Source: Podarcis melisellensis
Taxonomy: Eukaryota
Strand: one strand, 5' to 3'
Assembly (NCBI GenBank): GCA_964234715.1
Contig: OZ174280.1
Length of the DNA: 64,000 bases
Part shown: positions 35,916 through 63,512 of the stretch, piece after piece
Position numbering within the stretch: the first letter of the stretch is position 1
Layout of the letters: the number at the start of each line of letters is the position of its first letter
Notes under the pieces: model-generated
What the model was told of the DNA's origin: nothing
The model's input: the letters and a program-made list of their open reading frames with translations, nothing else
Databases searched by the model: none
Translations under genes and position numbers: made by a program

Positions 35916-36940
35916 ACATTGTTGCTGAACAGCTTGGTAGGTTTCTGGAGGAAACATCGGCATTAGATCCATTTCAGTCCAGTTTCCATCCTGGTTTAGG
36001 GACGGAGACGCCTCTGGTTGCCCTAACAGATGATCTCCGTAGACAACTGGATCGAGGCAGGTCAGGACTGCTGATCCTTTTAGATTTGTCAGCAGCCTTT
36101 GACATGGTCGATCATGATCTTCTGGACCACCGCCTCGCATACGTGGGGATACAGGGCATAGCCTGTAACTGGTTGTGCTCTTTTATCTCTGGTTGGGGAC
36201 AGAGGGTGGCACTAGGGAGGGAAATGTCGTCGCGCCACTCCTTGGTGTGTGGAGTGCCACAGGGCGCAATTCTCTCCCCGATGCTATTTAACATCTTTAT
36301 GCGCCCCCTTGCCCAGATTATCCAGAGCTTTGGGCTGGGCTGCCACCAATATGCTGATGACACTCAGCCCCAAGCATACTGACCAGATGCTTGGAAGCTG
36401 TGGCTGGATGGTTTCGTGGGAGCCGATTGAAACTAAATCCTTCGAAGACAGAGGTCCTATGGCTAGGTCGGGATGGCATGGGGATGAGGGACCAACTCCC
36501 TTCTCTTGCGGGGGCCCAATTAGTGCCATTGCCTTCCGTTAAGAGTTTAGGTGTAATCCTTGACGCCTCCCTTTCCATGGAGGCACAAGTTACAGCAACA
36601 GCCAAGGCGACATTTTTCCACCTTCGCCGTGAGTGCCGTGAGACCAGGGCCCTGCAGGATCTGATTTCTTTCCGCAGGGCCTGTAAGACAGAGTTGTTCC
36701 GCCTGGCCTTTGGCTTGGAGCCAATTTGATTCCCTCCCTCTCTTTTTTCTTTTCCTTCTCCTGCGATGAGGCTACATTTTAATATTTTAATCTTCAATTA
36801 TTTTAATGTTTTTTATTTTAGTTTTTAAGTTGTAATCATTCATCTTGTTTTTATTATTGCTTGTAAGCTGCTCTGAGCCCGGCCTTGGCTGGGGAGGGTG
36901 GGGTATAAATAAAAAAATATTATTATTATTATTTATTATG
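35916..36940 (+). mobile_element. L2-clade LINE fragment (reverse transcriptase and 3' end), frameshifted and internally deleted
   Basis: RT motifs DPFQS..F, LDLSAAFDMVDH, GVPQGAILSPMLFNI and YADDTQ; frameshift after YADD; (TATT)n-type tail near 36905-36940. Confidence 0.88.
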
Positions 36941-37863: not shown

Positions 37864-39510
37864 TTATAGGTTATGTAGCTTCTGAGGTATAGTGCAATAA
37901 TCAGTGCTGCTTGCCTCATGCACACAGTCGCTATAGTCAGTGTTGCATTTCCCACACTTGCAGCTCACGGCCACAGGATAGGAATAGTAGGAGACGACAT
38001 GGTGTTGACAGCCAGGGATCATCACAGTCTTGTACACCATGTCCTTGTATGTGCACACTTCCTGGGACAGGGCGCTCTGGGGCAGCAGCTTCTTACCATT
38101 ACTGTCCTGTAAGAGAATGGCAGTGGTTATTGCTTTTTGCTTAATCCTACCCGCATAATTTATGTTGTGCTCAGATAGAAATCTCTCCATCTCATCCCTC
38201 CCCAACGGTCACATTTTTGTAACCGTGCTGCTGAAGCAAGAAAGGCCATTTCATCCTTGTGAGGGGTTTTCAAGCTATGACATATGCATAGTCCCACCAT
38301 AATGTTGAATTTGTGGTACAAGCTTGGTTCCTTGTGTGGTTCCTTGGCATGATTATTTGGGGGAGGGTTGCTGAGCAGGATCAAATTCCTAAATATCCAC
38401 AGATTGGTTGTGACCTCTTGGCCCTCTTCTTTTGGTTTGTCCCATTCAGTTAATCTGAAATTATATATTTTGGTTTTTTCACTTTCTGAATTGGCCCTCC
38501 ACTTTTCTAGTGGCCATTTGCTTCCTGAACATCTGCTCATTCTTTCAACATTTACCTTCATTAAACTGCTGGAACTTTGCTAACCCTGCTTTTCAACCTG
38601 TTGCTCAGGTACCCTTTTGAGTGCAATCTTTCACCATGACCTTAAATTTTTCAGATCCAATTTGTTGCCAATACATACTGCTCTTAGTTCCCACCCATCA
38701 GTTATTGATGGTCATCATAATAATTGCAATTCCCCCCCCCCCGGCCACATTCTTCTCACCTACAGCCCTTCATCGCTGTTCTTTTGTTTTGGTTGATATT
38801 TATGAGGGTCATATTGATTCCACCTCTCTCTACCCACACTCCTGGCACTCCATTACTGAAGACCATGAGGAAGAGCTAGTACAACACCAACCCTAAACCA
38901 GCATCATGTAATGGGTGAGGGCCTGCTGTGTGCTGGTGGGGTGAAGTCACATTCTCCACTTCCTTTAGTGCCCTATAATCCACATGGCTAACCCAAATTT
39001 CATGAGAATAAAAAAAGCAAAAAATAATTATTGAATGTGCTCAAGGAAAATCATTTCCTCAAAAATTAAGAAAATGTCATAGTAGAAGCAACAGATAACT
39101 GTCCTTGATCACTTCCATGTCTCTGAAAAGTCCATTGATTCAAAGCCTCGACTACCCCAGTGTCTCCCATTTCACCTTCGCATTCAGTATAATGCCTCAA
39201 ACCGTTATATCACCTCATTCGTCTTCCCTGTTGTCTAATAATCCTTTCCTATTTACTCCATAGGTCCTAAGCTACTTATTAAACACTCTCTTTTTTCCTA
39301 ACCAACCAAGAAGGGACTCAATAGTGTGTTGTAAGAACATACCCGTGTCATGCAGTATCCTTCACAGATGGTGGTGTTGATGGCCAGACAGAAGGCACAT
39401 TCTCTCTTCTCCACGTGGATGATGTACTCAACGGGGACACAAAGGGACATGCTCTGCCCCAAAGTCAGGGCAAAGACTAGGAAGAGAGAGGTGAAAGGGG
39501 CAGGATTCAT
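37864..39510 (-). CDS. TSHB: Thyrotropin (TSH) beta subunit precursor, 136 aa, 2 coding exons
   Basis: Exon 39343-39510 ([56 protein letters not shown]) and exon 37864-38106 ([22 protein letters not shown]...[33 protein letters not shown]). All 12 cystine-knot Cys, the NTT glycosylation site and the TSH-type CNTDYSDC loop are present. Minus-strand AATAAA at 37781-37786. Confidence 0.97.
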
Positions 39511-41075
39511 GCTGCATGCAAAAACAAAGCAAGGCAAAGTCACATTAGACATTGTGAAGTCAGGAGTAGCTTATTAACAGAATATAAGGGACTTTCCCAG
39601 TCTCCGTTGCCAAACTCTCTGATCTTTTCTTTCTGTGCAATCAGGTACATGGGTTCTCTGTGTACATAAACATAAAGAATAACTAGTAAGCTATTTGTGC
39701 CCTAGCTAGACTGATGGAGGGCAGGTCCAAGTGGGAAATTCCTAGTTAAACTATAATATGTACATCTGCAAAGACAAGGAGTATCTTGAAGAAAGACAGT
39801 TGTCCTGACACACAGAATCTCTGCATCAAGGCTACCTTGCCCTTCTCTTCCTTCTGTCATTCCCATGCACTTGCATATCTAAGGATCAGCAATGCTTAAA
39901 AAGTACCCTTGAGCTTCAGGGTGCATGCATATATAACTTGGACAATAATGATTATGTTCTGCCAATCATACAGTAGCAAGCATTCTTAAATGTTGGAATA
40001 AAGAAGCAATGGAAGGTTTTCTCTAGGCTGAGCAGAGAAACACATAACAATTCAGTACATGGTTGCCTCAGTCTAAAACCTCTGTGCAAACTAAGAACAG
40101 CCCCAGTAAAACCAAAGTTAATGATACTGTAAAAAGAGGTCAAACATAATGCTCAGGATTTGTAAGCCATAAGCTAGTAATATAGTATCGCTTGGGAAAA
40201 TAGAGCTCCTTCTGCTAAGAGTGTCAGGTTGAATGAACAAAGCGATGACAGAATGGCAAGCCTCTGGCTGATGCCACAGAATGCTCCCTAGGAAAAGTCC
40301 TTTTTCTGAGGGCTTCTCCAGATTCATTGAACATTCATTCGAATTTGCTTGCAGAAAGCTTACACAGAGGTTAGACACTGGGCAGTATCAATTTTCCTCA
40401 TCCTGTCAGTGCAATGATAACTGCTTGTGCGACAGGATTTTTCTCTTACAGATAGGTAGCGTGTTGGTCTGCCATAGTCAAAACAAAAAAATTCCTTCCA
40501 GTAGCACCTTAAAGACCAACTAAGTTAGTTCTTGGTATGAGCTTTCGTGTGCATGCACACTTCTTCAGGATTTTTCTCTGTTTTCTCCCTGCATGCATAC
40601 TCTGCAGCCTCACCAAATCTGCTTTGAAAAGTTGGGAGAACTGCCAGAACAGATTTAGCGGGGCACAAGGGAGGAGAAAGGTGAATTCTATTGTGCAAGC
40701 AGAAATCCTTGCATTGTGCAGACATTTACTTAATGCTATAATGGATACAAGCCCATGTCTGGTCTTTAATGATCATCCATCCTGATTTGCTTGTGCAGTG
40801 TCCATACATCTTCCTGCAACTCATTAATTCATGCCATGCTTTTCAGTACATTTCCTGTGACTTAACTTACTGCAAACAGCCTGTCTTTAAAAAGGTAGAT
40901 TTGTTGTACTAGGGTGAGCAAGCAATTTAATTGCACACGTCTAAATTTATGATATACACTTAAATCCCTCCTGCAAAATAGTGACAGTGTGGATTCTGGA
41001 GGCACCCTGACAGTAGGGCACAAGTTGCCAACATCTACAAATATGCATTCATTCCTGAATTCCCCACATACTTAC

Positions 41076-41330
41076 ATAGAACACTGGCCAGACACCCACC
41101 TATCAGCCGTGAAGTGATGCCAAACTGGAAAGACCGTCAGCCGGCTCTTTCCTTCACACAAGAACCAGATTCTTCATTGATTCTGCTTCAGACGCAATAA
41201 GTCCAGCACAAACTCTGAGTGCATTTTATACTCCTCTGGTTAATTCCTGGCTGATCTACCTGTTTATGTAATTGCATTAATTGCTACTTCTAATCTCTGT
41301 AATATCTACTGAAGATTCATACTTGTCCAT
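41076..41330 (-). promoter_or_regulatory. TSHB: TSHB non-coding exon 1 and proximal promoter (TATA, D-box, Pit-1/GATA-like composite element)
   Basis: Minus-strand donor GTAAG at 41071-41075; TATAAAA at 41224-41230; TTATGTAA (D-box) at 41264-41271; minus-strand AAGTATGAATCTTCAGTAGATATTACAGAGATTAGAAG at about 41287-41324, resembling the mammalian Pit-1/GATA2 element as I recall it. Confidence 0.8.
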
Positions 41331-41695
41331 TCAGGAAATGTAATTGAGATATGGAGAACTATAACATCTCCGCCTAGCAGCTGGATGGCACAACTAATTA
41401 ATTTAATATTCATTCTTCACTTACCACAACATGAAAATACATATATATGGATTTAGGAAAGCCTTTGTTGACATTGGCAATTGCCGGGAAAGAACTGCCA
41501 TGGGAGAGAAGCAAGCCCAGTTTGCAGATCAGGGGGTCTTAGGATAGATTTGAATGGTGATGGAAGAACATAGAGGTCTATATATGAAATTCTCAGCAAC
41601 CCTTAACAAACTACAGAGGCCAGAATTATTTGAGAGAAAGAATGTGCTTTGAATGTGCCTTAAAGGTATAGGTAAAGGTGGGGACATGGGACATA

Positions 41696-42227
41696 GGACA
41701 TGGGTGGCGCTGTGGTGTAAACCACTGAGCCTCTTGGCTTGCCAATTAGAAGGTCAGCGGTGAGATCCTGTTGCTCTATCCCAGCTCCTGCCAACTGTTT
41801 CCATGTGCTCTGGTTTCCGCCACGGTGTTCTATTCTGGCCACATGACTCGGAAAGCTGTCTGTGGACAAACACCGGATCCCTCGGCCTGAAAGCGAGATG
41901 AGCACTGCAACCCCAATACAGTGGTACCTCGCAAGACGAAATTAATTCGTTCCGCGAGTCTTTTCGTCTTGCGAGTCTTTTCGTCTTGCGAAGCACGGTC
42001 AAGTCGCAACTGCACCTCTTCAAGCGGTTTTAAGAAAAAGGAAACAAACTCGCAAGACGTTTTCGTTTTGCGAAGCAAGCCCATAGGGAAATTCATCTTG
42101 CGAAGCAACTCAAAAAACGAAAAACTCTTTCGTCTTGCGAGTTTTTCGTCTTCCGAGGCATTCGTCTTGCGAGGTACCACTGTAGTTGCCTTTGACTCAA
42201 CCGTCCAGGGATCCTTTACCTTTACCT
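41696..42227 (+). mobile_element. Sauria SINE interrupted by a MITE
   Basis: Head GGGTGGCGCTGTGGTGTAAACCACTGAGCCTCTTGGCTTGCC...AGAAGGTCAGCGGT and tail (ACCTTT)n at about 42213-42230. Confidence 0.8.
41919..42182. mobile_element. Tc1/mariner(pogo/Tigger)-type MITE, intact
   Basis: Perfect 22-bp TIRs CAGTGGTACCTCGCAAGACGAA / TTCGTCTTGCGAGGTACCACTG flanked by a TA TSD. Confidence 0.9.
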
Positions 42228-42807
42228 TTTTTTAAAAGGTATAGCATGTATGTGGCCTCAGCTGAATGCATCCCTGTAGTTCAGGACTGTGCCTAGAAAT
42301 GGTAAGTGTGGATCATGCGACTGGCTGCATAGGGCTGGTGACTAGTTTATTTGACCGGAAAGCCAGAAGTCATTTTCATTATTCAGTCTGTGGGACATTT
42401 TTCTTTCTCCTCTCTTCTCAAGGTCTCTAAAAATAGATCTACATCATGGCAAAAGGGGCTTAAGTGTCCAAAAGCAACACTAATTAATTTGACTTTCTAT
42501 AATAAATCTCTTAAACCTATGCTATGATGAGTCAAGTTCTTTATTACGGTCATAGACCAGCATTAGCAAAACATCTAAATAAGTAGCATAACAGTATGAA
42601 TCTAAGTGAATAATTATTAAATAAATAAGAGCAAGAACCAAACATATACATAGAATACTTAATTAGGCATAGATAATGGGTGAGTAAAAATTTATAAGAA
42701 AAATTAAAAGATCGGTTAACACAGCGATATGGGGTGGGCTTCAGAAGTGCAGATCTAACAATATGGGCCTTCAGGATTGAATTGCGTGGCTATACCCCCC
42801 CCCCAGG

Positions 42808-43535
42808 TGGAATAAATAAAGACACCGGACACAAGTATTTTGGTTAATGGGCGAAAAATGGCCACAACTTTATTGATTACAGGTAAGAGAGGTATTGACT
42901 TTAGGCATTGGCCCCTAACCGACTATCTGGTCTAACCGGGAAGGGTTAAACACCAACAGGGGGAGCTACCCAAGATGCATATCCCTAGGCGCTCCCCGAG
43001 GGGTTACCGATCGGGGGCGCGCTTTAGGCCCTAGCCTCCGTAGGTTTCGGACGAGGCGTCGCCCCTCGGAGTCCTTGAACGAACTACCCTTCAAGCATTG
43101 GGGGAGGTGATGGCGTTCCTCCCCCCCGACCTCATTTGCATAACAATACACCGGCCAATGCCTACCGCCAAAACCGAGGGAGTTGTGACGATTTGCTACG
43201 AGGTAGGCGAAAAAACCAAGTGGCTTCAAAACCAGCCAATTAGCCAAATGGAAAAACTCCTACCAGGCCCCTTGCGGCGACCAGCCGAAGCCCATAGCAA
43301 AGTCGATGGCAAAACCTAAAGGGTGGGTGGGTGGGTGGGTGGGAAACCTAGTTAGCTGCGAAGGAGAAAAGGGGCGAGCCAAGGGCTGCCCCGACCTTAA
43401 GTGGCCTCTGGAAGGCCCGCCCCCGTCGCCAGCCTATTGGCTGGCGCTGCGGGGGAATGTAAATTAAGGGAATCCCTGCTTCCCGCGAGGCTGACGCCAG
43501 CCCCGCGGGAGTGTGGGCAGGGTCGGGAGCCCGCA
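42808..43535 (-). mobile_element. CpG-rich solo-LTR-like element
   Basis: Abrupt GC/CpG-rich block. On the minus strand, in order: CCAAT (43436-43440), GC box (about 43416-43424), AATAAA (42869-42874) and terminal TTATTCCA. Boundaries approximate; no unambiguous TSD. Confidence 0.5.
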
Positions 43536-44444
43536 ACCCCCCCTCCTCCTGAAGTTCGGTAGTGGCATTGTAGCATAGACCATTCTCCGTTGAATATCTA
43601 TCATGGCAGCGCAAAATCTGGTGAATGAATATGTAACTTCTGGGGTCTCGTCATGTAGTAATAGGGAAATGTTGTGTTGTTCTGAATGCCCAGGAAACTT
43701 ATATAAGATGGATTGGATAAACCTAGTTTAAATGTCTATATAATATTGGCAATAAAGAAGGGCATGCTCCGTTGTTTCCTGCTGGCCAAAGCCACATGGA
43801 CATGAGTTTGTTATTATCTCATTGTTATATAATCTTTCCCAGGTGGCCCTAATTCAGAAATGGGGGCCCTCAGCAGATGGGTGGACCCTGGATTTCTGCA
43901 GGAAATAAATTGTGTGAGAGTGAGGAACTAAGCAGGGGTACATTCAGAGAATGACTGTCAGGTGCTCCGTCTGAGAATCAAGGGGAGTCTTCACATATGA
44001 TATCTTTGGAACATTGCCAGATCTAAATGTAAGTACAGCATCAGTACAACGGTCCTATTAATTTTAGCAAGATAATGGTGCATTGGATTGAGTGCAGCAA
44101 TCATCACCATGGGTTTACATGAGCGGGTTCTATTTCTTCTTTTGTTCAGCTTTGAAACACTGGTGGGACATTATTTTATTTATTTAAAACATTTTTATTG
44201 CACCCTTCAGCAAAATTTATTCCAAGAAAGGAAGGAAGAAGTGACTAGTATGGAACAGAAAAAGCAGCAATATTTAGAAGTAGGTAAAATGTACTTTTAA
44301 AGCCAGTAGATGAACCTTCTAAAAGTTGTTGGACTCCAACTCCTATCGGCTTCAGTTAGCATGGCCGGTAATCAAAGATGATGGGAGTTGTAGCACAGCA
44401 ACATCACCTTTTTCTCCAAGATTCTCTCTCTCTGCCCCCCTCAG

Positions 44445-44592
44445 TTCTCACAACAACCTTTGAGGCAGGTTAGACTGAGAGATAGTGGCTGGCCCAATAG
44501 ACCCACAGTGAGCTTCTTGGCCGGGTAGGGATTTGAACCCTGCTCTGCCAGACCCTAGTCCAACACTCTAACCACTACACTACATTGGCTCT
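44445..44592 (-). mobile_element. tRNA-derived SINE (MIR/Squam-like)
   Basis: Reverse strand reads AGCCAATGTAGTGTAGTGGTTAGAGTGTTGGACTAGGG...GGGTTCAAATCCCC (A and B boxes). Confidence 0.7.
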
Positions 44593-46292
44593 AGACATAC
44601 TCAGTGTCTAGTTTGCCCTACATCAGATCAAGGTCCACTTAACATGCCAGGAATATGCATAGCTCTTTAAGTTGTTCCAATAAAGACAAAATCTCATTTA
44701 TTTATTTTTAAGAGCCTTTGTTTATATCTTTGGTGGAAAGGGAGTGGATGAGGGAGTCTGAAAAAATGGGGAGAGGATGTGTAACAATACAAGGCAGGGC
44801 TTGTAAGCAGGCAAACATCAGAGGTAGATGTTTTGGGCCATTATTGCATTGCCTAGGTAGGGAAGGGGTGTGAACTGGGGTGTGGAATCTCCTCTTGGGC
44901 ATCTATCAGATGTGTTTAGCTAAAGAGGAAACAGATATCATCATGGGGTGAGGCTGATGCTTGAAATGTGCCTATCCTATGCTTGAGCAAATGCATATTT
45001 GGTCTAATGAAATTTGTGAAACGGCTGGCAGGGTTTGTGCAGGCCATCATGTAAATATTTTAATATAAAAATATTATTATTTATTATTTATGTTAGAATA
45101 AATTACGTATTTAGGTGTCTTAAATACCAGACCAGCTTCACAGCTCCTCAGCTGAAGATTCTGAGGTTTCATCTAGGAGACAAATTCTCACTCCAAGACA
45201 ATGAAGCAAGAGACTCCATATAGTAAAAGTCCCTTGCACTAGGTTGTAGTTATGCCTTTTTCTGAATACACTCCTCTGTCATGTACCAGATCTTTCCACA
45301 ATTCCCCTCATTAAGAGACCTCTTCAGAATCTACTATACCGTGGTAGTCCAGCTCCATTTCTGATTTATCTAAGGCACACTTGCTTCCCAGCTGGTTACA
45401 TGACTTGTCCATGTGCCGCTTAAACTCTAGGATCTCCATCCAATGACAGCCAGTTTAGGTATTAATCATTCATCTCTAACCTTTCTCCTAAGCAAAACAT
45501 CCTTCTCACTGACATCAACGAGTTGCACTTTCATGAAACAGAAGATAGCGCTGCCGTGTTGCCGTCAGATGAGTAATCCCAGGAACCCAAATATCAGGGC
45601 ACTGGATGTGCCTCAATGATAAGCAATGCTACAGAAAATGCAAAAGATGACTATTTAAAAGCAGGCAAGACGATGATGTCACATTTGTTGTAAAAATGTG
45701 CCAGTATTCTGAAAAGATTGTTAAGGGATGCAGACCTAATTATTCTGCTGCAGCACACAACGGAGGGACAACAAAACAAAACAAAGCCTGGAAGATTTGT
45801 GGGATGAAAAGTTCGGATTTCAGAAGGAAGTCACAATGGAAAATGAAACAATATGTCTGCCCTGAAACTTTTGAAGGCAGAAACACTATTGAAATTGGGA
45901 TTGCATAGAAGCAGCCAACCACCTTGAGCACAAATCATCAGGAGTGTACAGTTAAAAACCCCCACATCTGGATAGTCCCTAAGTTGTCAGAAAACTGAAT
46001 CTAGGGTCCCTTCAAGTGTCCTTACTGTGAATTCATAATGAGCTCTCATCAATAATTGCAATCACCCCCATCTCCAGCATTAGCTGCCACATTATATTGT
46101 CCAAGTAGGAACAGATAAATGTTGTCTCCTGCTTTCAAAGTCTAGAAGCTGCAATGGCTTACAAAGTTTCAAAGTACAAATTGTGTTCTTTGGTTATTGT
46201 GCTTTTTATTATAAAATTATAAACTAAATCTAATTAAGTAGAATAAAATAAATCTAAATACCTATTCCTGCATTTCAGGGAGTTGGACTAGA

Positions 46293-46439
46293 CAGGCATG
46301 TCCAACTCCCAAGAGACTGTGATCTACTCCCACTATAAAAAAACTGGCAGTGATTTCTTTATTTTTTGCCAGGCCAGGATCACACGATCAACCAGGATCG
46401 ACCAGGGACACCCCACAATAGACTGGTTGGACATGCCTG
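46293..46439. mobile_element. hAT-type MITE nested in a CR1-tail SINE remnant
   Basis: TIRs CAGGCATGTCCAAC / GTTGGACATGCCTG; duplicated flank ACTAGA; the host TTCCTGCATTTCAGGGAGTTGGACTAGA|TGATCCTCAGGGTC... resumes after the insertion. Confidence 0.75.
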
Positions 46440-49400
46440 AACTAGATGATCCTCAGGGTCGCTCCCAGCTCTACAATTCTAAGATTCTAGGAATGAATCA
46501 GAATAAGCATAGCATGGGTTGGGGAGGAAAAATGGGCAGCGAGGAAGCAACAGCAGTTTGTGCTTCTGAAGTGAGCATGCAGATTATACACAATATTTTG
46601 AATGTCCAATTAGGGAGAATTTGTTCCTGAACTAGAACAGGGATTTGCCAGATGTTGGTAGGTTTTGATTCTAGATTGACACTTCCATATGTGGTATGCT
46701 GATGTAGGAGCATTCACTTCCATTATCACCATGGACCAGTATCCACTCCTGGAAAAGTACACTCTTGCCATTAGCATCTGAATGCATCCAATGCAGAGCC
46801 AAAACTCAAGCATGTCTTAGACTGGATTAGAAGATCAACACATGGTAAGTGAGGTGTCCTAGAACTGGGCTGCTGTTATCCGTGCTTTGCTTTTGGGTTT
46901 GAGACTGAGTTATTGTTTTTCTGTGACCTTTTGTATGAAAAAGATGGATTGATTTAATCCTTGCCAGCACTAGTCACAGGTTAATCATTCACTTGCAGTA
47001 TGAATCATTAAACTGTTTTTGCAGGCCTAATTGGTTAACAATTTGAGTACATTTACTTCCTGCTTGTATGTAAGGTAAAGTATTGTTCCCAGAATCTTGG
47101 AGCAGATGTGGCTGGTTTCTGAAGGATGAGCACAAGAAAATATTAATGGTGCAGCTTTGGACTTGTGGCAGTGACTTCAGAACTATAAGTATGGTTGTTA
47201 CTTTTCTTCATATGTGAAAGATTGGCTTAGTTTCTAGTCTGAGGAAAATAACCAGCAAACATAAGAGCAGCTTGGTTTGTCAAACAAGATTCATTTTTCA
47301 AGACTTTGCTTCTGTTTCCTCATGAATTAGTCTTCTATTTCTGCTGTGGCAAATCTGGGAAGGGTCACCTAGAACGTTCTTGTCATATCTCTGCAGCCCA
47401 AGGTAAACCAGACTACAGTAGATTGTTGGTTAATTACTACATCTTTCCTAAACTATTTCTGTACTCATCAGAAAACAAACTGGTGAGAAATTCCGGAAGG
47501 GTGTCTGTGTCCCCTAAAACAGCCTCTGTTAATGGGCGGCTCTCCAAATGTGGTTGGAGTACAACTCACATCATCTCTCGCTACTGGCTGGGACTGAGGG
47601 GAATTGCAGTTCAACAGGCTCTGGAGTGCCACCCATTAACCACCCATGTGCTAGTTATTTGCACTGAGTTCTTTTCACCTTCTTGTTTGTAGCCCTCTTT
47701 CTATGCAGATCATGTATCCAACTTTGTTCTGATTTGGAATGTCTCTATGATGCAACTATCATGTGACCATCTCTCTTGTTTCTGAAAAATAAGTAGGGCT
47801 ATGATCAAAAGCACAGTGGCTTTAATACTCTTCTTATTCTTGAGAAGGAAATTGTTAAAGTCTTCCTTTTAAGAATTGGGAAAGATCATTCCATGGGGAT
47901 AGTTGTAGAAACTGTTTTGTTGATACACCTGTCAATTCATGTTGTGCTGAAACACAATCTTATGGTACATACATATCATTTCTTGTTAAGTTTCTCAGCT
48001 ATATTCAAATGACAGGCCAGGCCAGCCCAGCCCAGCCAATAATTGTTCTGCATGACTAACCTTAGAATTCTTTTATAGTTTTCCGTTACCATAGAGATCT
48101 CTATGGGCTTTGCCCAGCCCTGCAGTGAACATATCCCAAGTAATTAAACAAACAGAAACACGCTAAGGCTAAGTATCTGTTACTCGGGCCGTTGCTGCCG
48201 TCATCATCTTTGGTGAGTTTCAAGAGATTTGGAGAGTGTGTGTGTGTTAGGGGAGTGTATTGCTTTGGATGAATCACAGATCTCAAGCTGAAGAAGAGTG
48301 CTTTGGGGGGATTCTGGGCCTGTCTGAGAAGCAGGAGTTACATAAGTATGGGTTTGTCTACACTTCTGCTTGTCTCACCACTTTCCCCCAGGAAAACCCA
48401 CTCCGTACTGATGAATCAGAGCAAATGTCAATCGAGTCTTCCATGGATTTGTGATTCAGCAGTAGAGAGCAGGTTTTCCTAGAAAAAGCTGTGGGACAAA
48501 CAGAAAACCACTCAGACCCGTGCCCAGAAAGCACAGGAGAAGTGGAAAACCCCTTGGGCCCGAGCTTTCTAGGCATGGGACAAGAGAAAGTGTAGAGCAG
48601 CACGTAAATCATGTAAATAAAAAATCTACTTGCTGCAGCTTCTTGTCAGTTTGCCAGGTTGCGAGCTTGGAATTGCCTTCTAAACTTGAATTATGCTGAT
48701 GAACTGGAGGAGTAGGCAGACGTGCCTTCTGTTGTCCCTCCCTATTCCAGCCTTTGATTTGGCCTGTGCCTCAGGCGGCAGGATCCACTGAAGCAGCGGG
48801 TCCCAATGTTGATCTCTCCCCCCATCCCCACCCCTGTTCCTGATGTATAACTTTCCTCACCTTTTCTTTCCTGGGGGGGAGGAGAGAGCCATTTTGGGGT
48901 CCACCTCAGGTGCCGAAATGTCTTGGGCTGGCCCTGATGCATATCTTTAGATTCATAATTCAAGTCCTGTTCTTTCCAGCAAACAGGAGATGGAGAATAA
49001 GATGTTTCCTTGTCTCCTGATTCAGCAGTAGATTCAAAGATAAAGGTCAACTACAAGTTAACAACCTGTTAACCAAATATTATTTGCATATGGAATCCAC
49101 TATGGCCATGATTTTCAGTTACCATTGTATTTCATGAATCTGTCTGTCTCTATTGTCGATTATTCACCAAAGCCAGACTAAATGTATTTCCATCAGAAGT
49201 ACTAAATGGCAGACTGTCTGGCATACCCTATCAGAATAGGCTCTCCTTATGTTCTCAGGGTTTTGACTCTATGAAGAATATCCTACTACAATGTCAGCAG
49301 TTCAAACAAGCCAGAGATCAATTAATTAAACCCTTATTGGTAAACTTAACTGGAAAATCTGAAGCCTTCTACCTTTAAGTACCTCCTTGGAGATATGTCA

Positions 49401-50371
49401 AACAATACTACCCTGACCGTGGCTAAATTCCTCTTAGAAGTAATAAGAAATAGAAACTTACATGCTCTGGATAAAACATATTGGCTGCCTTGGAATCCTT
49501 TCCCTATATTTCTGTTTTATTTTGCTTTTGAAAATTCTTCTGTGGGTCTTTGGACCAAAATAAAGAATGTTATCTTATCTTATAACTTACCAGCGTAGTT
49601 GTTTTGAATATCTGGTTCTGGTAGTGCTATGAAAACTGTTAAGCCCTTCACATTAACACAGGGTATTCATACCCTAGCAGAGTACAGTCTTGATAAGCCC
49701 CAACGGAGGCAAAGGTTACAAGTTTTCAGTATGCCAAAGGCCAATTATTATTGTTCCACATTCACAGCTCATGATTACAAACTGCATCAATCATCTTCAT
49801 CCTATTTGCCCTGTGAGGTCTGACACTACCTTTCACATGTTACTGATAGGAATCTAAGACTCAGTAAATTAATTGCTCAGGGCTAAATCTAGCATATATC
49901 AAAGTTAACCCAAGTCCAAGGAAAACATGCTATCACAGTTGTGACACGTTAAGACTCCATTTATGTATTTCTGCTGAGGTACATGCCTTCAATAAGCCAC
50001 GGAATTGACAATGAAGCATTGAAATACTTGGTTTGGCGGTAAAGGCTTCTGCTGGCTCTACTCAGAGCATCCATGTTTGTCTCTTACCTCTCAAGGGGCA
50101 GAATCAATTGGTAATAACAGGGGATGTGTGTTTCTAACCCTACTTGTCTCTCTCAGTGTCTCTCTCAGAGAGGTGTATGCCTTATATGAAAGAACTATTA
50201 ATTGAGAAGATAAAGTTTAATGCCTTCTGCTCTTTTACACCTCTAAATGCTTTTGCAGAGAACCTAGCAGAAGCAATTTTAATTTATACCCATAACTCTG
50301 TTATTGTTGTTTTAAATATGTTTCCACAGAAGAAAAAGCTAACATAATTGACGAGGAAAAAACAGAAAGCT

Positions 50372-53119
50372 ATGATGGACAAAAGAACATATATTTGCCT
50401 TGTAGTCTCCATCATACTGAAGACAGTTTCACTTCAGACTACAAACTACATCCCAGCAATGAATACCACATCTAGGACTGAAGGGCTGACCGTTTCCAGT
50501 ACAGAAGCAGGCAACATCACTATATTGCAGAATGGAAGTGCCAGCTTGAGTACATTCGCAACAACAGTGAATATTACCAACTTTCCTACGCTTCTACAAA
50601 GCACCCATTCTCCTCATACAGAAACATCAGCTATGACTGCTGAAGCCAAAACTGAGATGACATTTCCAACAGAGTCATTCTCTACTAATTCTACACATCA
50701 AGCCACAGTTGAAGATTTCAATGTCACAACTTCAGCTACCACATTAAAACCGACAGTCCAGCCTTCTAGTACCGCACCACCTATCACCAGCAAGGGCTAC
50801 CTTTCAGTTTCAGCAATTCAGTTTCCAGGTAGGTCTGATGGACAAAATATAAAGTTACAGGCAAACACATGTAAACTGAGACCTGATGCTGTGATGTTGT
50901 TTTATAGTGAAAAGCTATGTTAAGAGTAGAGAAGTGGCAGGAGGAGGAGTGCCTCCTGTTTATCTGCTCCAAATCACCCTTCCCACACCTAGCTTTTCCC
51001 CTATTGCTTCCAAATAGCATGTTTGTTCTTAGGAAAAGGTATCCCATCAGACTACAAGGACATATTGGAACAATGTTTACCTTCCTTTGTATGCACATTC
51101 GAAGAGTCACTCTTAAATTGTTTGATATTGAAAATGACACATGATGAAAGCATCTGTAGCAATAACTAGACTATATTAGTAGTAACCCCCAAGACCCTAA
51201 ATATACTTATCGAGAAGTCCCATTATCATTGACTGGACAAATGTCTGAATAAACATCCACACTGATTTGCAGTCAGCAGAACACTAAGCTATTTCAAACT
51301 AATATTAATATTAATAATAATAATAATAATTTATTTATTTATTTATTTATTTATATCCCGCCCATCTGGCTGAGTTTCCCCAGCCACTCTAGGTAGCTCC
51401 CAATCGAGTATTAAAAACAATACAGTATTAAATATTAAAAACTTCCATAAACAGGGCTGCCTTCAGGTGTCTTTTAAAAATAGGATACTGTAGTTGCTTA
51501 TTTCCTTGACATCTGACGGTAGGGCGTTCCAGAGGGCGGGCGCCACTACCTAGAAGGCCCTCTGTCTGGTTCCCTGTAACCTCTTCTCACAATGAGGGAA
51601 CCGCCAGAAGGCCCTCGGTGCTGAATCTCAGTGTCCGAGCTGAACAATGGGGGTGGAGACGCTCCTTCAGGTATACAGGACCGAGGCCATTTAGGGCTTT
51701 AAAGGTCAGAACCAACACATTTAATTGTGCTCAGAAATGTACTGGGAACCAATGCAGATCTCTTCAAAGGCAGCCCCACGAAGAGCACATTGCAGTAGTC
51801 CAAGCGGGAGATAACTAGAGCATGCACGACTCTGGCGAGACAGTCCGCGGGCAGGTAGGTCTAAGTTTTACTGAGCTTTTTAAACTAAGTATTAGTAGGC
51901 TTTCTTTATTATTTCATTGCAGCAGAAGGAGCTGGTTTGAGCAATTCAGATACCATCCTAACCATATTTTTTGCCATTGTTCTCGCACTGACAATTCTCG
52001 GATTCATTATATATTTTTTCAATAAATATCGAAAACGAAGAGACCAATTTTCCCATCATCCACTTTATGATGCCTCTTTTGAAACAGGTTAGTATATTTT
52101 AAATCAAATACCAATATCATGTACAAGACTAATGAGTAATTATGGGAAGGGGCAATACTCAGCTTTTTATATTCATTCATAGTAGCTGTCTTCCCTTAGT
52201 CACTTACCAACCACTACATGCTAAGTAATGGAATGGCACAGCAAATGGTAACAATTTAAAACAGCTCCAAGAGGTACTACTGCTGTTTCTCAGTCTAGTG
52301 GTAAAATTAGCTGTTTGTTGTGTGGAGTGTAGAGTCTGAAATGGAAGTGGAGTTTCAGCAGCAGGAAACATTGGGTTTACCAGACAATGTGACAGTTTCC
52401 TGCAGGGAAAGGATACAGCCTAGATGCATGTATGAGAAAGTTTTTGAGTATCAATGTTTAGCTTTAAAAATATTTCTGTTTTTTTGAAATATGTAAAGGA
52501 ATAATGTTTATAACCAAGGGCCTGTGGCACAGAGTACTGGGTGCACAGCTGCAAAAAACTTATTTGTGCTCATATCAAAGCCCCCTGAGGTGCTACTGCA
52601 AAAGGCAAATGACCCTTTTGACCAGTGTAAGGGGCTGCCTCTGAAAGGAAGAACTAGAACATTCACATGTGCTGCTTTGAATCCATGCCAACATATTTCT
52701 ATCCTCACTGGGTATGTTGTACATCTGAACTGGATACTGGCAATTTTCTATGAATGCTACTTAAATTGTATCATTGCACAAGAAAGATTTTAAGTCTTTA
52801 GCTTTTTGGATTGATTCAGATTTGGATTGATCAGAAAAAGCTTGGATTCCCAGTAATATTTATTTTTTAAAAACTGTTTACAGTGGATAGATATGCTACT
52901 CCAGATGACACACTTGTAATATCAGGAGGCTTATATGATGCACCAAGAATTTCTAATTCCAACATGACAGTGTATGACGATGATGAGCTTCAGATTGATC
53001 AGTTACCATTTAGTGCTCAACCTGGACAATACAGACTGGAGTTTTTGCCTGGTGAAAAAGAAGTGGACTTTTCTTCAACTTATGAGGGAACATTTCAAAT
53101 ACCACCAGGAGGCATATAA
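50372..53119 (+). CDS. Uncharacterized type I transmembrane mucin-like glycoprotein (MUC15-like architecture), 285 aa, 3 coding exons
   Basis: Exons 50372-50828 (acceptor at 50329/50330; in-frame TAA at 50345-50347 upstream of the ATG), 51923-52087 and 52884-53119 total 858 nt, phases 1-1, GT-AG. Hydrophobic N-terminus, Ser/Thr-rich ectodomain with 6 N-glycosylation sequons, TM helix ILTIFFAIVLALTILGFIIYFF, basic stop-transfer KYRKRR, and a tail with FSHHPLYD and TLVISGGLYDAP. AATAAA at 53155. Confidence 0.85.
51310..51860 (-). mobile_element. L2-like LINE 3' fragment in an intron of the mucin-like gene
   Basis: (AAT)n(ATTT)n tail followed by TTTATATCCCGCCCATCTGGCTG..., then GC-richer L2-like ORF remnant on the reverse strand. 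Confidence 0.65.
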
Positions 53120-53154: not shown

Positions 53155-53222
53155 AATAAATATTTGAACTTCTATCCAGCTCAATAAAAATAAGAAAATA
53201 AAATTAATAAAGTATATTTATT
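53155..53222. terminator. Clustered bidirectional polyadenylation signals between the mucin-like gene and SYCP1
   Basis: AATAAA on + at 53155, 53183, 53197 and 53206; TTTATT (minus-strand AATAAA) at 53217-53222. Confidence 0.6.
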
Positions 53223-61500: not shown

Positions 61501-63512
61501 TTTGTTATAAATAAATAAATCACTGACACACCAAAGTAGGTGGGAATTAAATACCATATTTTTCGCACCATAGGGTGCACCGGACCATAGGGCGCACACA
61601 GTTTTTAGGGGGGGGGGAATCAAGAAAAAAAATATTTCCCTCCCCCAGCCCCAAAGAGCAGCGTACAGGCTGCGCACAACCTCTCCCTGCCGGAGGGGTT
61701 GCGCACGGCTATGGCACAAGCCAAGGCAGCGAGCAGGATGGACCCCGCCCACTGTTTTAGCTTCCTCTTTAGCCCTGCGCAACCTCTCCTTGCCGGGAGA
61801 GGCTGCGTGGGGCTAAAGAAGCCATAGCCCTGTGCAGCCTCTCCTTGCCGGAAGGGTTGCGCGCAGCTATGGAGCAAGCCAAGGCAGGGAACAGGATGGA
61901 TCCCGCTCGCTGTTTTGGCTTCCCCTTTAGCCCCGTGCAGCCTCTCCTTGCCGGGAGAGGCTGCGTGGGGTTAAAGAAGCCATAGCCCCGTGCAGCCTCT
62001 CCTTGCTGGAGGGGTTGCGCGCAGCTATGGAGCAAGCCAAGGCAGCGAACGGAATGGATCCCGCTCGCTGTTTTGGCTTCCCCTTTAGCCCCGTGCAGCC
62101 TCTCCTTGCCGGGAGAGGCTGCGTGGAGCTAAAGAAGCCATAGCCCTGTTCAGCCTCTCCCTGCCGGAGGGGTTGTGCGCGGCTATGGCACAAGCCTGCA
62201 TTCGCTCCATAGGACGCACACACATTTCCCCTCAATTTTTGGAGAGGAAAAACTGCGTCCAATAGAGCAAAAAATACAGTACCTCATGAAAATGCAAATG
62301 TTTAAATTGCTACATCTGGAGCTACACTTACTTTTTTGCTGCAGCAGATCTCACTATTTAAATGTACCTTTTAATATATATAATATAAATAATAGTTCGT
62401 ATGTTGGAAAATGAGAACCAATGCAGCAAATATAGCAATCCTCAGCTCCATCCCACATGGCCCTTCTCTTGATTCTAGCTTGTATGTATAAAAATAAGTT
62501 GTGTTTACCTTATGCTTTTCCATAAGTGCTACCATTTCAGTTATTTTGTGCTGACATTGAATGTCGATTTCTTTCTGCTTTGCTACTGCTTCATCAGCTA
62601 CGAATTTCATTCTCTCTGCCTATTAATATCATATGTGAATGAAATAGTTTAATGAAATAATATTGATATTCAATAATTATATGTGGAACCTATGAGTTAA
62701 ATTCAGTGGCTGCACAAATGGAACAGACCATCTGAACCAATATGGATAAAAATAAATCATTTTTTAAAGTAACAATTAAAGACTAAATTTTAACAAAACA
62801 AAAAAATCTGTTTCTTTTATTATAAAAAGTTGTAGATTCTAAGAGAGTAATTAATCCAACCACCCTAGTTCTAGTTAGTGGATCAAACAACAGGCTTTGA
62901 ATGAACAGTGATGCTACACTGGCAAGTGAAATACCTGAGTCATACCAAAGTTCCTGATCATGGTATAATACTACTGTGCCTTTAATACAGTCTAGGAGGG
63001 TAGCACTTATTCTATGGATTTAGCCTTAGTATCTTTTATACTTGTGAAAGGAACTCCCAGTTTCATTTCTCTCATCTCAGAAATCAAACACCCACAGCTC
63101 AAGATTGTAGGATAAACCTTTCCTTTGGCTGACCAAGGCACAGAGCTTAAAGCTCTTTTTCCATCAGGTTTTCCCAGTGTGAAAGTTTTTAAGCTCTCTA
63201 CCTGAAAGAAAAACCTGCATTTGAAGCTTCCTGTCCTCATCCCGAACCATAACATGTGGGGTACATTATGAGTAAGACAGAGTATGATAAACAGAGACTG
63301 CTAGGAACTGATAAGCAGATTGATAAATCCCAATCATGTAAATAAAAACGAGTTTATGCAAGTTTACAAAATGTAAAAAAAACTTGAACTCTTACCTCTT
63401 TGAAAAGTTTTTCTTCTGCTTCTCTAGCCTTCTCTATTTCATTTTTATAGTTGTCAGTTGTTTCTTTATGCAATTTCTTTATATTTTCCAACTCTAATTG
63501 TAATTTATTCAC
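53855..63512 (-). CDS. SYCP1: Synaptonemal complex protein 1, C-terminal nine coding exons (gene continues beyond the window)
   Basis: Phase-0 exons: 63396-63512 (VNKLQLELENIKK...), 62509-62619 (...EIDIQCQHKITEMVALMEKHK), 60012-60104 (HQYDKTVEEKD...), 59405-59479, 57453-57512, 57115-57264 (KTQTSFIETPK...), 55562-55702 (TYTVKTPPK...KKKRK), 54087-54173 (SIVSEEEMFKKLY...TPKK), 53855-53998 (...RKMRDAGWTAISKVDRKKKMKEAGKLFA*). Hallmark SYCP1 motifs CQHKIxEMVALMEKHK/HQYDK and the C-terminus. Confidence 0.95.
55498..55538. repeat. (CA)n microsatellite
   Basis: Directly visible, about 25 bp from a SYCP1 splice donor. Confidence 0.95.
60505..61255 (+). mobile_element. L2 LINE fragment in a SYCP1 intron
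   Basis: Degenerate ORF2 peptides AVKAAKKAYFAASIASS...PAELF and TTSSLDPCTSWLIK...LKKAVVKPLLKK; (AAAT)n tail near 61240-61255. Confidence 0.75.
61554..62279. mobile_element. Tc2/pogo-like non-autonomous DNA transposon carrying a 158-bp GC-rich tandem array
   Basis: TA-flanked imperfect TIRs CCATATTTTTCGCACCATAG / CAATAGAGCAAAAAATACAG; about 3.3 copies of a 158-bp unit at about 61665-62195 (the ORF track shows repeated peptides offset by 158 nt). Confidence 0.75.

What the first reader, a model, noticed from the sequence alone, without database searches (positions are those of the whole stretch)
50372..53119. Unnamed membrane-mucin gene between TSHB and SYCP1: candidate MUC15 ohnolog absent from the human locus
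Seen: an intact 3-exon, 285-aa ORF (signal-like N-terminus, Ser/Thr-rich ectodomain without tandem repeats or SEA domain, 6 N-glycosylation sequons, one TM helix, about 100-aa tail). The ORF track shows only fragments and misses the TM exon. Established knowledge: human SYCP1 and TSHB are neighbours with no such gene that I know of. MUC15 has the same layout (one ectodomain exon, a TM exon, a tail exon), a juxtamembrane FSHRRLYD motif (here FSHHPLYD), and lies on 11p14 near FSHB and BDNF, the paralogon of TSHB/NGF. Inference: this gene is a whole-genome-duplication paralog of MUC15, kept in reptiles and lost in at least some mammals.
Basis: partly seen in the sequence, partly recalled or inferred. 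Interest (0 to 1): 0.85.

Follow-up and report, generated by a model that had tools for sequence, protein, structure and literature searches.

The report
Conserved membrane glycoprotein gene beside TSHB
This is a real, intact gene for a small sugar-coated cell-surface protein that sits between TSHB and SYCP1 in jawed vertebrates from sharks to lizards and was found in no mammal; databases already predict it but nobody has studied it, and its suspected kinship with mammalian MUC15 fits its chromosomal position but is not shown by sequence.

Summary
Exons at 50372-50828, 51923-52087 and 52884-53119 (+) have GT/AG borders and give 285 codons: signal-like start, Ser/Thr-rich ectodomain with 6 N-glycosylation sequons and no tandem repeats, one TM helix, and a tail of about 98 aa.

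NCBI already predicts this protein in Lacerta agilis (LOC117048781, 285 aa, same junction residues). Relatives occur in squamates, turtles, crocodilians, kiwi, amphibians, lungfish, coelacanth, sturgeon, teleosts and cartilaginous fishes. No mammal or neognath bird appeared in any search. UniRef labels two fish members si:ch211-105j21.9, the symbol of an uncharacterised zebrafish gene.

The position next to SYCP1 is kept in lizard, kiwi and grouper. The ectodomain evolves fast (19% mean identity). TM plus tail is conserved (50%), with an invariant DDTLVISGGLYD-type motif. Tail dN/dS against Lacerta is about 0.05.

The MUC15 link is only partly supported. Pfam Mucin15 is the commonest weak hit (13 of 40 members, best E 0.0014) but stays below threshold, vanishes without the TM helix, and TMEM154 scores about as well. 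Position favours paralogy: in grouper the gene lies just downstream of an SLC5A-type transporter gene, taken to be slc5a8l, much as MUC15 lies near SLC5A12.

Verdict: an ordinary, uncharacterised gene lost in mammals, and a plausible but unproven MUC15 ohnolog.

The parts
50372..50828 (+). Coding exon 1: start codon, signal-like N-terminus, Ser/Thr-rich N-glycosylated ectodomain (152 codons plus 1 base, phase 1)
   Evidence: 94.7% identical to Lacerta agilis L003:10001-10457 with no gaps. dN/dS 0.63.
50829..51922 (+). Intron 1 (GT...AG), holding a lineage-specific repeat insertion of about 558 bp at 51303-51860, with (TAA)n and (ATTT)n runs at its 5' edge
   Evidence: (the insertion is absent from Lacerta agilis).
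51923..52087 (+). Coding exon 2 (165 nt, phase 1 to 1): juxtamembrane S-x-ILT, TM helix, basic stop-transfer NKYRKRR, and the QFSHHPLYD motif. It is a frame-preserving cassette
   Evidence: 98.2% identity to Lacerta. AlphaFold2 on the Lacerta ortholog's TM+tail gives one helix at pLDDT 94-96. Isoforms lacking exactly this exon are annotated in five other species.
52088..52883 (+). Intron 2 (GT...AG)
   Evidence: About 94% identical to Lacerta.
52884..53119 (+). Coding exon 3: cytoplasmic tail with the invariant DDTLVISGGLYD core and the QYRLEFLPGE block, then stop TAA
   Evidence: dN/dS 0.05 against Lacerta. 58 hits at E<=0.001 in the exhaustive search.
53155..53211 (+). Cluster of four AATAAA polyadenylation signals 36-92 nt after the stop codon
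50300..50329 (+). Candidate splice acceptor (pyrimidine-rich tract ending ...TTTCCACAG) 42 nt upstream of the ATG, suggesting a non-coding first exon further upstream (inferred)
   Evidence: By analogy, the grouper mRNA contig L002 has a separate 5'UTR exon spliced just upstream of the ATG exon.
37864..39552 (-). Flanking gene TSHB (two Cys_knot coding exons)
62371..62610 (-). Exon of flanking gene SYCP1 (SCP-1 profile positions 681-715). The gene's 3' end lies closer to the glycoprotein gene; in Lacerta it starts 739 bp after the stop

Best explanation
The interval holds a functional gene with three coding exons for a 285-aa type I membrane glycoprotein.

What is shown:
- The protein has a signal peptide, a fast-evolving Ser/Thr-rich ectodomain with N-glycosylation sequons, one TM helix, and a disordered cytoplasmic tail of about 98 aa.
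- The tail carries short motifs that are almost invariant from sharks to lizards (QYSHHPLY, PDDTLVISGGLYD, GQFRLEFLPGE).
- It belongs to an unnamed family found across jawed vertebrates. Two fish members carry the UniRef name Si:ch211-105j21.9, a zebrafish gene symbol. The family sits next to SYCP1.
- No mammal or neognath bird was found.

What is inferred about how it works:
- The ectodomain acts as a glycocalyx spacer or anti-adhesive coat, as small mucin-like proteins do.
- The conserved tail docks a conserved cytosolic partner. The invariant Tyr in GGLYD makes a phosphotyrosine adaptor or a trafficking adaptor the likeliest candidate.
- The 165-nt, phase 1-1 TM exon can be skipped to give a TM-less soluble isoform.

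What is inferred about its origin (about even odds): it is the 2R paralog (ohnolog) of mammalian MUC15. The pair slc5a8l plus this gene at TSHB-SYCP1 would mirror SLC5A12 plus MUC15 at 11p14, followed by reciprocal losses.
For: Gene model and orthology:
- Splice sites and reading frame hold.
- The Lacerta agilis ortholog is the same length with the same junctions.
- The three-coding-exon layout is kept in Lacerta, chimaera and Xenopus.
- A grouper RNA-derived contig is the spliced form of the genomic gene.

Range:
- 70 to 117 relatives in squamates, turtles, crocodilians, kiwi, amphibians, lungfish, coelacanth, sturgeon, teleosts and chondrichthyans, with no mammal.

Synteny:
- TSHB(-), gene(+), SYCP1(-) in Lacerta and kiwi.
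- SSF transporter(+), gene(+), SYCP1(-) in grouper.
- A tetraspanin gene is the neighbour in Xenopus.

Constraint:
- Mean pairwise identity is 19% in the ectodomain against 50% in TM plus tail.
- 11 columns are invariant.
- Tail dN/dS is 0.05 against 0.63 in the ectodomain.
- The tail is predicted to be disordered, so the motifs behave as linear motifs.

TM-less isoforms:
- Annotated in two geckos, a sea turtle, kiwi and a caecilian.

MUC15 link:
- Mucin15 is the Pfam family hit by most members (13 of 40), always in the same register.
- PMC7720500 reports 'MGC-24 and Mucin15' domains for zebrafish si:ch211-105j21.9 and no human or mouse ortholog.
- UniRef names the Silurus member 'Mucin-15'.
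- PMC9309457 puts slc5a8l between tshba and sycp1, and puts the SLC5A8L and SLC5A12 regions on the same proto-vertebrate chromosome.
- PMC8523896 and PMC2151771 place MUC15 with SLC5A12 and ANO3 at 11p14.
- PMC2151771 reports MUC15 only in mammals, which is the complement of this family's range.
Against: - No Mucin15 hit reaches Pfam's cut-off of 27 bits.
- Ten teleost, sturgeon and paddlefish full-length members give no Mucin15 hit at E<=1.
- Tail-only pieces give none at E<=10, so the weak signal leans on the TM helix and stop-transfer region.
- TMEM154 scores about as well (9 of 40 members, best E 0.0098 on TM-plus-tail pieces; E 0.0013 on full-length P0098).
- The language-model search ranks TMEM154 and opalin above MUC15, all under 0.9.
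- A profile search at E<=10 found no PF15672 protein.
- No transcript evidence from this lizard itself was available.
- No experiment bears on the proposed tail or ectodomain functions.
- In mammalian MUC15, deleting the tail had no effect in the assays of PMC12752613, so a tail-centred mechanism cannot simply be borrowed from MUC15.
Confidence: 0.55

Rival explanations
1. It is a real, conserved vertebrate gene, but an independent family of small type I mucin-like membrane proteins with no common ancestry with MUC15. The shared architecture (signal peptide, Ser/Thr-rich ectodomain, TM helix, short tail) and the weak profile hits would reflect convergent composition and generic features of TM helices plus stop-transfer regions.
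For: - All Mucin15 hits are sub-threshold, and TMEM154 matches equally well.
- The hits vanish without the TM helix and are absent in teleost members.
- Unrelated TM families (FixQ, BatA, COX2_TM) give similar scores.
- The language-model neighbours are a mix of small single-pass proteins, all under 0.9.
Against: - The gene sits in the region paralogous to the MUC15 region, directly downstream of an SLC5A8/12-clade transporter gene, as MUC15 sits by SLC5A12 (PMC9309457; PMC8523896).
- The two families have complementary ranges: MUC15 reported only in mammals (PMC2151771), this family found in no mammal.
- Mucin15 is still the most frequent Pfam hit, and always in one register.
Confidence: 0.3
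2. It is the direct ortholog of mammalian MUC15 rather than a paralog. There would be one ancestral gene, which moved from the TSHB-SYCP1 interval into an ANO3 intron in the mammalian stem lineage and then diverged quickly.
For: - The ranges are complementary: no mammal, and MUC15 is reported as mammal-specific in PMC2151771.
- The architecture is similar.
Against: - A move that landed exactly in the paralogous block beside SLC5A12 would be a coincidence.
- PMC2151771 reports protein-level traces of MUC15 exons at the ANO3 locus in chicken and Xenopus. That implies a MUC15-like gene was already there in early tetrapods, alongside this gene.
- That paper dates from 2007, and later annotations may list MUC15 in non-mammals. 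I could not check this.
Confidence: 0.1
3. It is a chance ORF combination or a decaying pseudogene in this species.
For: No transcript data from this species could be examined.
Against: - The 285-codon frame is intact with consensus splice sites.
- The exons are collinear and gap-free with the annotated Lacerta gene.
- The tail exon has dN/dS 0.05.
- The tail is conserved as far as sharks.
Confidence: 0.03

Closest known systems
Zebrafish si:ch211-105j21.9 (ENSDARG00000097845) and the NCBI 'uncharacterized protein LOC...' orthologs (e.g. Lacerta agilis LOC117048781)
   Same: Same family. The Lacerta protein is 285 aa, 89% identical over exon 1 and about 98% over TM plus tail, with the same exon junctions and the same TSHB and SYCP1 neighbours. 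UniRef gives carp and Paramormyrops members the zebrafish gene symbol. The zebrafish protein is listed as 294 aa, from a 2.4-kb gene on chromosome 6 (PMC7720500).
   Different: Nothing essential. The window's copy differs by a lineage-specific 558-bp repeat insertion in intron 1. I did not see the zebrafish sequence itself; the link rests on UniRef names given to two other fish members.
MUC15 (Pfam PF15672 Mucin15), mammalian cell-surface mucin at 11p14 nested in ANO3 beside SLC5A12
   Same: - Both are small type I glycoproteins (334 against 285 aa) with a Ser/Thr-rich, N-glycosylated ectodomain lacking SEA or VWD domains, one TM helix and a tail of 74 to 98 aa (PMC12752613).
- Mucin15 is the commonest weak Pfam hit, in a constant register over the TM helix and juxtamembrane region.
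- Each lies near an SLC5A8/12-clade transporter gene in regions traced to one proto-vertebrate chromosome (PMC9309457; PMC8523896).
- From my own memory, unchecked: MUC15 also has a secreted splice form, and MUC15 and SLC5A12 lie on the same strand.
   Different: - Scores stay below Pfam's cut-off.
- The tail alone shows no detectable similarity.
- This family has about 35 extra C-terminal residues (GQFRLEFLPGE...).
- The genomic site differs (TSHB-SYCP1, not ANO3).
- The range differs (non-mammals against mammals).
- Here the tail is the most constrained part, whereas MUC15's tail was dispensable in the assays of PMC12752613.
TMEM154 (Pfam PF15102)
   Same: It is a small single-pass type I protein. 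It gives weak hits in a constant register over the TM helix and about 40 tail residues in 9 of 40 members (best E 0.0098 on TM-plus-tail pieces; E 0.0013 for full-length P0098). It is also the top language-model neighbour at 0.88.
   Different: All hits are below the 30.3-bit cut-off and are lost when the TM helix is removed. From my own knowledge, TMEM154 has a short ectodomain and lies at 4q31, outside the 1p13/11p14 paralogon.
CD164 / MGC-24 sialomucin (Pfam PF05283), the source of NCBI's automatic name 'sialomucin core protein 24-like' for fish and shark members
   Same: Type I sialomucin-like layout.
   Different: There is only one marginal hit (E 0.8, 10.5 bits, cut-off 28.5) among the members scanned. 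The automatic name is not supported.

Membership tests
Unnamed gnathostome family (Lacerta agilis LOC117048781; fish members labelled si:ch211-105j21.9) | Conserved TM plus tail with QYSHHPLY, PDDTLVISGGLYD and GQFRLEFLPGE motifs | tested here: met
   The window's exon 2 and 3 translations carry all three motifs. Exon 3 alone finds family members at E down to 7e-30. Alignments A1-A3 give the motifs.
Unnamed gnathostome family (Lacerta agilis LOC117048781; fish members labelled si:ch211-105j21.9) | Position next to SYCP1, convergent with it, in the NGF-TSPAN2-TSHB-SYCP1 block | tested here: met
   Window: TSHB 37.9-39.6 kb (-), gene (+), SYCP1 exon at 62.4 kb (-). Same order in Lacerta, kiwi and grouper.
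Unnamed gnathostome family (Lacerta agilis LOC117048781; fish members labelled si:ch211-105j21.9) | Three coding exons: ectodomain, TM cassette of about 55 codons, tail | tested here: met
MUC15 (Pfam PF15672 Mucin15) | Score at or above Pfam's gathering threshold (27 bits) | tested here: not met
   Scores listed were 13.6-14.8 bits for lizard TM-plus-tail pieces. Best E among 40 members was 0.0014. No hit for single window exons or for ten teleost, sturgeon and paddlefish proteins.
MUC15 (Pfam PF15672 Mucin15) | Similarity of the cytoplasmic tail itself (beyond the TM helix) | tested here: not met
   40 tail-only pieces gave no Mucin15 hit at E<=10. Only P0003 gave an alignment that ran on to profile position 305.
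MUC15 (Pfam PF15672 Mucin15) | Type I topology, Ser/Thr-rich N-glycosylated ectodomain without SEA, VWD or tandem repeats, single TM helix, short tail | tested here: met
MUC15 (Pfam PF15672 Mucin15) | Genomic position inside ANO3 next to SLC5A12 | tested here: not met
   The gene lies between TSHB and SYCP1. This fits a paralog, not an ortholog. In grouper it lies next to the slc5a8l-type transporter gene.
MUC15 (Pfam PF15672 Mucin15) | Juxtamembrane FSHRRLYD-type motif and matching exon layout in MUC15 itself | not testable with these tools
   No search returned a MUC15 sequence. The motif string was not found in the paper library.
TMEM154 (Pfam PF15102) | Score at or above the gathering threshold (30.3 bits) | tested here: not met
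   Best score 19 bits. 9 of 40 members matched at E<=1. No hit without the TM helix.
Mucins in the strict sense (PTS tandem-repeat domain) | Tandemly repeated Pro/Thr/Ser-rich units | tested here: not met
   No tandem repeats in the coding exons. Exon 1 is 34% Ser+Thr with only 9 Pro.

The most novel reading that the evidence does not exclude
The gene is the ancient twin of MUC15. A two-gene block (an SLC5A8/12-type transporter followed by a small membrane mucin) would have been duplicated in the vertebrate whole-genome duplications. Mammals then kept MUC15 and SLC5A12 and lost this gene and SLC5A8L, while most other jawed vertebrates kept this gene. Its invariant cytoplasmic DDTLVISGGLYD motif would mark an undescribed docking site for a conserved signalling or trafficking partner. 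Its TM cassette exon would switch the protein between membrane-bound and secreted forms. Strong enrichment of the zebrafish gene in microglia and macrophages of regenerating retina (PMC7720500) would tie it to an immune or regenerative function absent from mammals.
Probability: 0.3. Interest if true: 0.55.

Novelty: new member of a known kind. Interest (0 to 1): 0.4.

Why it matters
It adds one more well-conserved vertebrate gene that mammals have lost, and therefore one that mammal-centred biology has never studied. The cytoplasmic tail has stayed nearly unchanged for about 450 million years, which implies a specific and still unknown binding partner. If the MUC15 link holds, it would explain the apparent 'mammal-only' origin of MUC15 (PMC2151771) as reciprocal loss of whole-genome-duplication twins. 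It would also give MUC15 research a comparative partner in zebrafish. For annotation, the family deserves a name and a profile; the automatic labels 'sialomucin core protein 24-like', 'mucin-4-like' and 'osteocalcin 2-like' are not supported. None of this is very surprising to a specialist: small mucin-like type I proteins are common, and the gene is already predicted in public genomes.

Tried and rejected
- Single window exons against Pfam gave no Mucin15 hit, only chance TM families and a spurious Kelch_3 match to the ISGGLYD stretch.
- Getting MUC15 sequences for a profile-profile comparison failed. hhalign against MUC15 or TMEM154 was therefore not run.
- I did not build the joined spliced protein of the window. 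Exon pieces were searched by reference, and the NCBI Lacerta ortholog P0001 stood in for the full length.
- The language-model atlas search gave only leads below 0.9 (TMEM154, opalin, MUC15, EVI2B).
- AlphaFold2 of TM plus tail gave only the TM helix, with no fold to search, so I ran no fold search.
- The MGC-24/CD164 naming was rejected.
- Look-ups of P0166 and P0002 by exact sequence found nothing.
- tblastn with the fused Stegastes model found no slc5a8l relic in the window.
- Earlier scan notes held nothing on this window or on MUC15.
- A paper search for the string SHRRLYD found nothing.
- I met no contig that I took for human, and handled no human sequence.
Full report
**1. The observation**

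There is an ATG at 50372 and a donor CAG|GTAGGT after 50828. An acceptor ...CATTGCAG| lies before 51923 and a donor ACAG|GTTAGT after 52087. An acceptor TTTACAG| lies before 52884, and the TAA ends at 53119. The exon lengths 457+165+236 nt give 285 codons plus the stop. The split codons read GCA (Ala) and GTG (Val).

The three in-frame pieces translate without stops:
- Exon 1 (152 aa) starts MMDKRTYICLVVSIILKTVSLQ. It is 34% Ser+Thr and holds six N-X-S/T sequons.
- Exon 2 holds ILTIFFAIVLALTILGFIIYFF followed by NKYRKRRDQFSHHPLYD.
- Exon 3 is a 77-aa tail.

The coding exons contain no tandem repeats and no Pfam domain. Four AATAAA signals follow the stop codon. The TM exon appears only as a 51-aa ORF.

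Exons were searched by reference, and an NCBI ortholog returned by a tool served as the full-length proxy.

**2. It is a real, already predicted gene**

The exon-1 ORF found 'uncharacterized protein LOC117048781' of Lacerta agilis (P0001, 285 aa, 89% identity), plus Zootoca and Rhineura proteins. P0001 reads ...QFP-A-EGAG... and ...FET-V-DRY..., which is exactly the predicted splice product.

The Lacerta locus (L003) is collinear with the window apart from a 558-bp insertion at 51303-51860 in the window. The three exons align without gaps at 94.7, 98.2 and 97.5% identity. The introns are about 94% identical, and the GT/AG borders are kept. Nei-Gojobori counts, summed exon by exon, give dN/dS of 0.63 (ectodomain), 0.59 (TM exon, only 3 changes) and 0.05 (tail; 5 synonymous changes against 1 non-synonymous).

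**3. Family and range**

I ran three searches:
- TM plus tail of P0001;
- an exhaustive phmmer of the window's exon 3 against 1.84 billion representatives (58 hits at E<=0.001);
- a 79-sequence profile (117 hits).

Together they recover members in squamates, turtles, crocodilians, kiwi (Apteryx), frogs, salamanders, caecilians, lungfish, coelacanth, sturgeon and paddlefish. They also recover many teleosts, and sharks, rays and a chimaera (names). No mammal and no neognath bird appeared.

The few long multi-stretch hits (seven proteins of 715-3346 aa, with 3 to 22 matched stretches) were not examined. They are probably repeat proteins matching the GG-containing stretch, like the spurious Kelch_3 Pfam hit.

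UniRef labels the carp and Paramormyrops members 'Si:ch211-105j21.9', a zebrafish gene symbol. Other automatic names (sialomucin core protein 24-like, mucin-4-like, osteocalcin 2-like and so on) are artefacts of composition.

Across 40 diverse members, mean pairwise identity is 19% in the ectodomain and 50% in TM plus tail. The invariant columns are H197, L200 and D216-x-L-x-ISGGLYD. The consensus is ...SE.ILT-TM-K.R.RR.QYSHHPLY..S.ET.DRY..PDDTLVISGGLYDAPR.YNPNMTVLED...PF.SRPGQFRLEFLPGE.E....

**4. Synteny and gene structure**

- In the window, TSPAN2-like (about 6.9 kb, +), mitochondrial-carrier exons (33.2-34.9 kb, +), TSHB (37.9-39.6 kb, -) and an SYCP1 exon (62.4 kb, -) flank the gene.
- Lacerta and kiwi show Cys_knot(-), gene(+), SCP-1(-).
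- Grouper shows an SSF transporter(+), then the gene(+) 1.3 kb downstream, then SCP-1(-).
- In Xenopus a tetraspanin gene follows.
- In the chimaera the neighbour is a 1125-aa gene with no Pfam record.

The three-coding-exon layout is kept in Lacerta, chimaera and Xenopus. A 1.4-kb Logan contig (L002) is the spliced grouper mRNA. It has a 5'UTR exon plus the three coding exons, and the whole 254-aa ORF is contiguous. This is direct transcript evidence for the family, though not for this lizard.

A pyrimidine tract ending in CAG at 50329, 42 nt before the ATG, suggests the lizard gene also has an upstream non-coding exon. This is inferred.

**5. Alternative TM-less isoform**

Exon 2 is 165 nt with phase 1 on both sides, so skipping it keeps the frame. 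Isoforms that lack exactly this 55-residue exon are annotated in Sphaerodactylus, Paroedura, Lepidochelys, Apteryx mantelli and Rhinatrema. I infer a soluble form made of the ectodomain fused to the tail. Whether it is made in quantity is unknown.

**6. How it probably works**

AlphaFold2 on the TM-plus-tail alignment gives one confident helix (residues 3-38, pLDDT 94-96 in its core) and a disordered tail (pLDDT 44-58). The strongly conserved tail blocks are therefore linear motifs rather than a fold.

My best reading, which is inferred, has three parts:
- The ectodomain is a rapidly evolving, heavily glycosylated glycocalyx spacer. Its size was shown to be what matters for MUC15 in PMC12752613.
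- The tail docks a conserved cytosolic partner through DDTLVISGGLYD and its neighbouring blocks. The invariant tyrosine makes a phosphotyrosine-dependent adaptor or a sorting adaptor the likeliest class.
- YDAP is kept in tetrapods, but the site reads YDGP in teleosts and YDES in sharks, so a strict YxxP site is not conserved.

Expression clues come from papers only:
- Zebrafish si:ch211-105j21.9 was enriched (log2FC 7.9) in microglia and macrophages of regenerating retina, and was listed as lacking human or mouse orthologs (PMC7720500).
- A salmon gene carrying that symbol is expressed in gill well above a gill cell line (PMC10616884).

**7. The MUC15 question: sequence evidence**

- Pfam Mucin15 is hit weakly by TM-plus-tail pieces: E 0.02-0.05 and 13.6-14.8 bits against a cut-off of 27.
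- It is the commonest family among 40 members (13 of 40 at E<=1, best 0.0014).
- The register is always the same, with profile positions about 218-267. Only once did the alignment extend to position 305.
- TMEM154 is nearly as frequent (9 of 40, best 0.0098; 0.0013 for full-length P0098).
- Ten teleost, sturgeon and paddlefish full-length proteins give no Mucin15 hit.
- Forty tail-only pieces give neither family at E<=10.

The signal therefore depends on the TM helix and stop-transfer region, which is weak ground for homology. The atlas search gave TMEM154 0.88, opalin 0.87 and MUC15 0.86, which are leads only.

I could not obtain any MUC15 sequence.

**8. The MUC15 question: positional evidence**

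This evidence is better.
- PMC9309457 documents the fish order ngfb, tspan2a, slc25a55a, tshba, slc5a8l, sycp1. It also documents loss of slc5a8l in tetrapods, and assigns the SLC5A8L, SLC5A8 and SLC5A12 neighbourhoods to proto-vertebrate chromosome 11.
- The grouper locus shows the gene directly downstream of the SSF transporter gene, taken to be slc5a8l, on the same strand.
- A Stegastes gene model even fuses the two (P0166).
- MUC15 lies nested in ANO3 (TMEM16C) at 11p14.2-3 (PMC2151771). It is listed with SLC5A12 and ANO3 as neighbouring genes in pig (PMC8523896).
- From my own memory, unchecked: MUC15 and SLC5A12 are on the same strand, with MUC15 downstream.

A duplicated two-gene block would explain this neatly. 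PMC2151771 (2007) also reports MUC15 only in mammals, with protein-level traces at the ANO3 locus in chicken and Xenopus. That range is complementary to this family's and fits reciprocal loss of ohnologs. I put MUC15 ohnology at about even odds.

**9. Verdict**

The gene is not new to databases but is unnamed, uncharacterised and absent from Pfam. Its family spans jawed vertebrates generally, not just reptiles. The MUC15 relationship is a reasonable hypothesis that rests on position, not on demonstrated sequence homology. I score interest as moderate.

Noticed in passing
window 33192-34860 (+): Three exon-sized ORFs match Mito_carr weakly (E 0.001-0.005). They look like an SLC25A18/22-type glutamate carrier, lying between TSPAN2 and TSHB. 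This fits slc25a55a, which PMC9309457 lists in fish and coelacanth at this spot and as missing from the human locus. If so, it is a second gene at this locus kept in the lizard and lost in mammals.
   Followed up: partly
window 51303-51860 (intron 1): A repeat insertion of about 558 bp is absent from the orthologous Lacerta agilis intron. It has (TAA)n and (ATTT)n microsatellites at its 5' edge, and its short ORFs look like a dispersed squamate repeat. I did not classify it.
   Followed up: partly
window 39600-50300: tblastn with the fused Stegastes transporter model found no relic of slc5a8l between TSHB and the glycoprotein gene. This agrees with the reported loss of slc5a8l in tetrapods (PMC9309457).
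   Followed up: yes
P0062, P0066, P0067, P0068, P0070 (other species); window exon 2, 51923-52087: Isoforms that lack exactly the 55-residue TM exon are annotated in two geckos, a sea turtle, kiwi and a caecilian. The exon is a frame-preserving cassette (165 nt, phase 1-1), so a soluble isoform is possible in this lizard too.
   Followed up: partly
P0166 (Stegastes partitus, 596 aa): A database protein named 'sodium-coupled monocarboxylate transporter 1-like' is a gene-model fusion. An SLC5A8-like transporter (PF00474) is joined to the TM and tail of this glycoprotein family. It is an annotation error, but it reveals that the two genes are adjacent on one strand.
   Followed up: partly
window 35726-36797 (both strands): ORFs with reverse-transcriptase-like sequence (e.g. 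...LLILLDLSAAFDMVDHDLL...YADDTQ...) lie between the carrier gene and TSHB. This is probably a LINE fragment.
   Followed up: no
L004:21054-23651 (Callorhinchus milii): The gene downstream of the chimaera ortholog, on the opposite strand, encodes 1125 aa with no Pfam record. By position it could be SYCP1, but I did not check.
   Followed up: no
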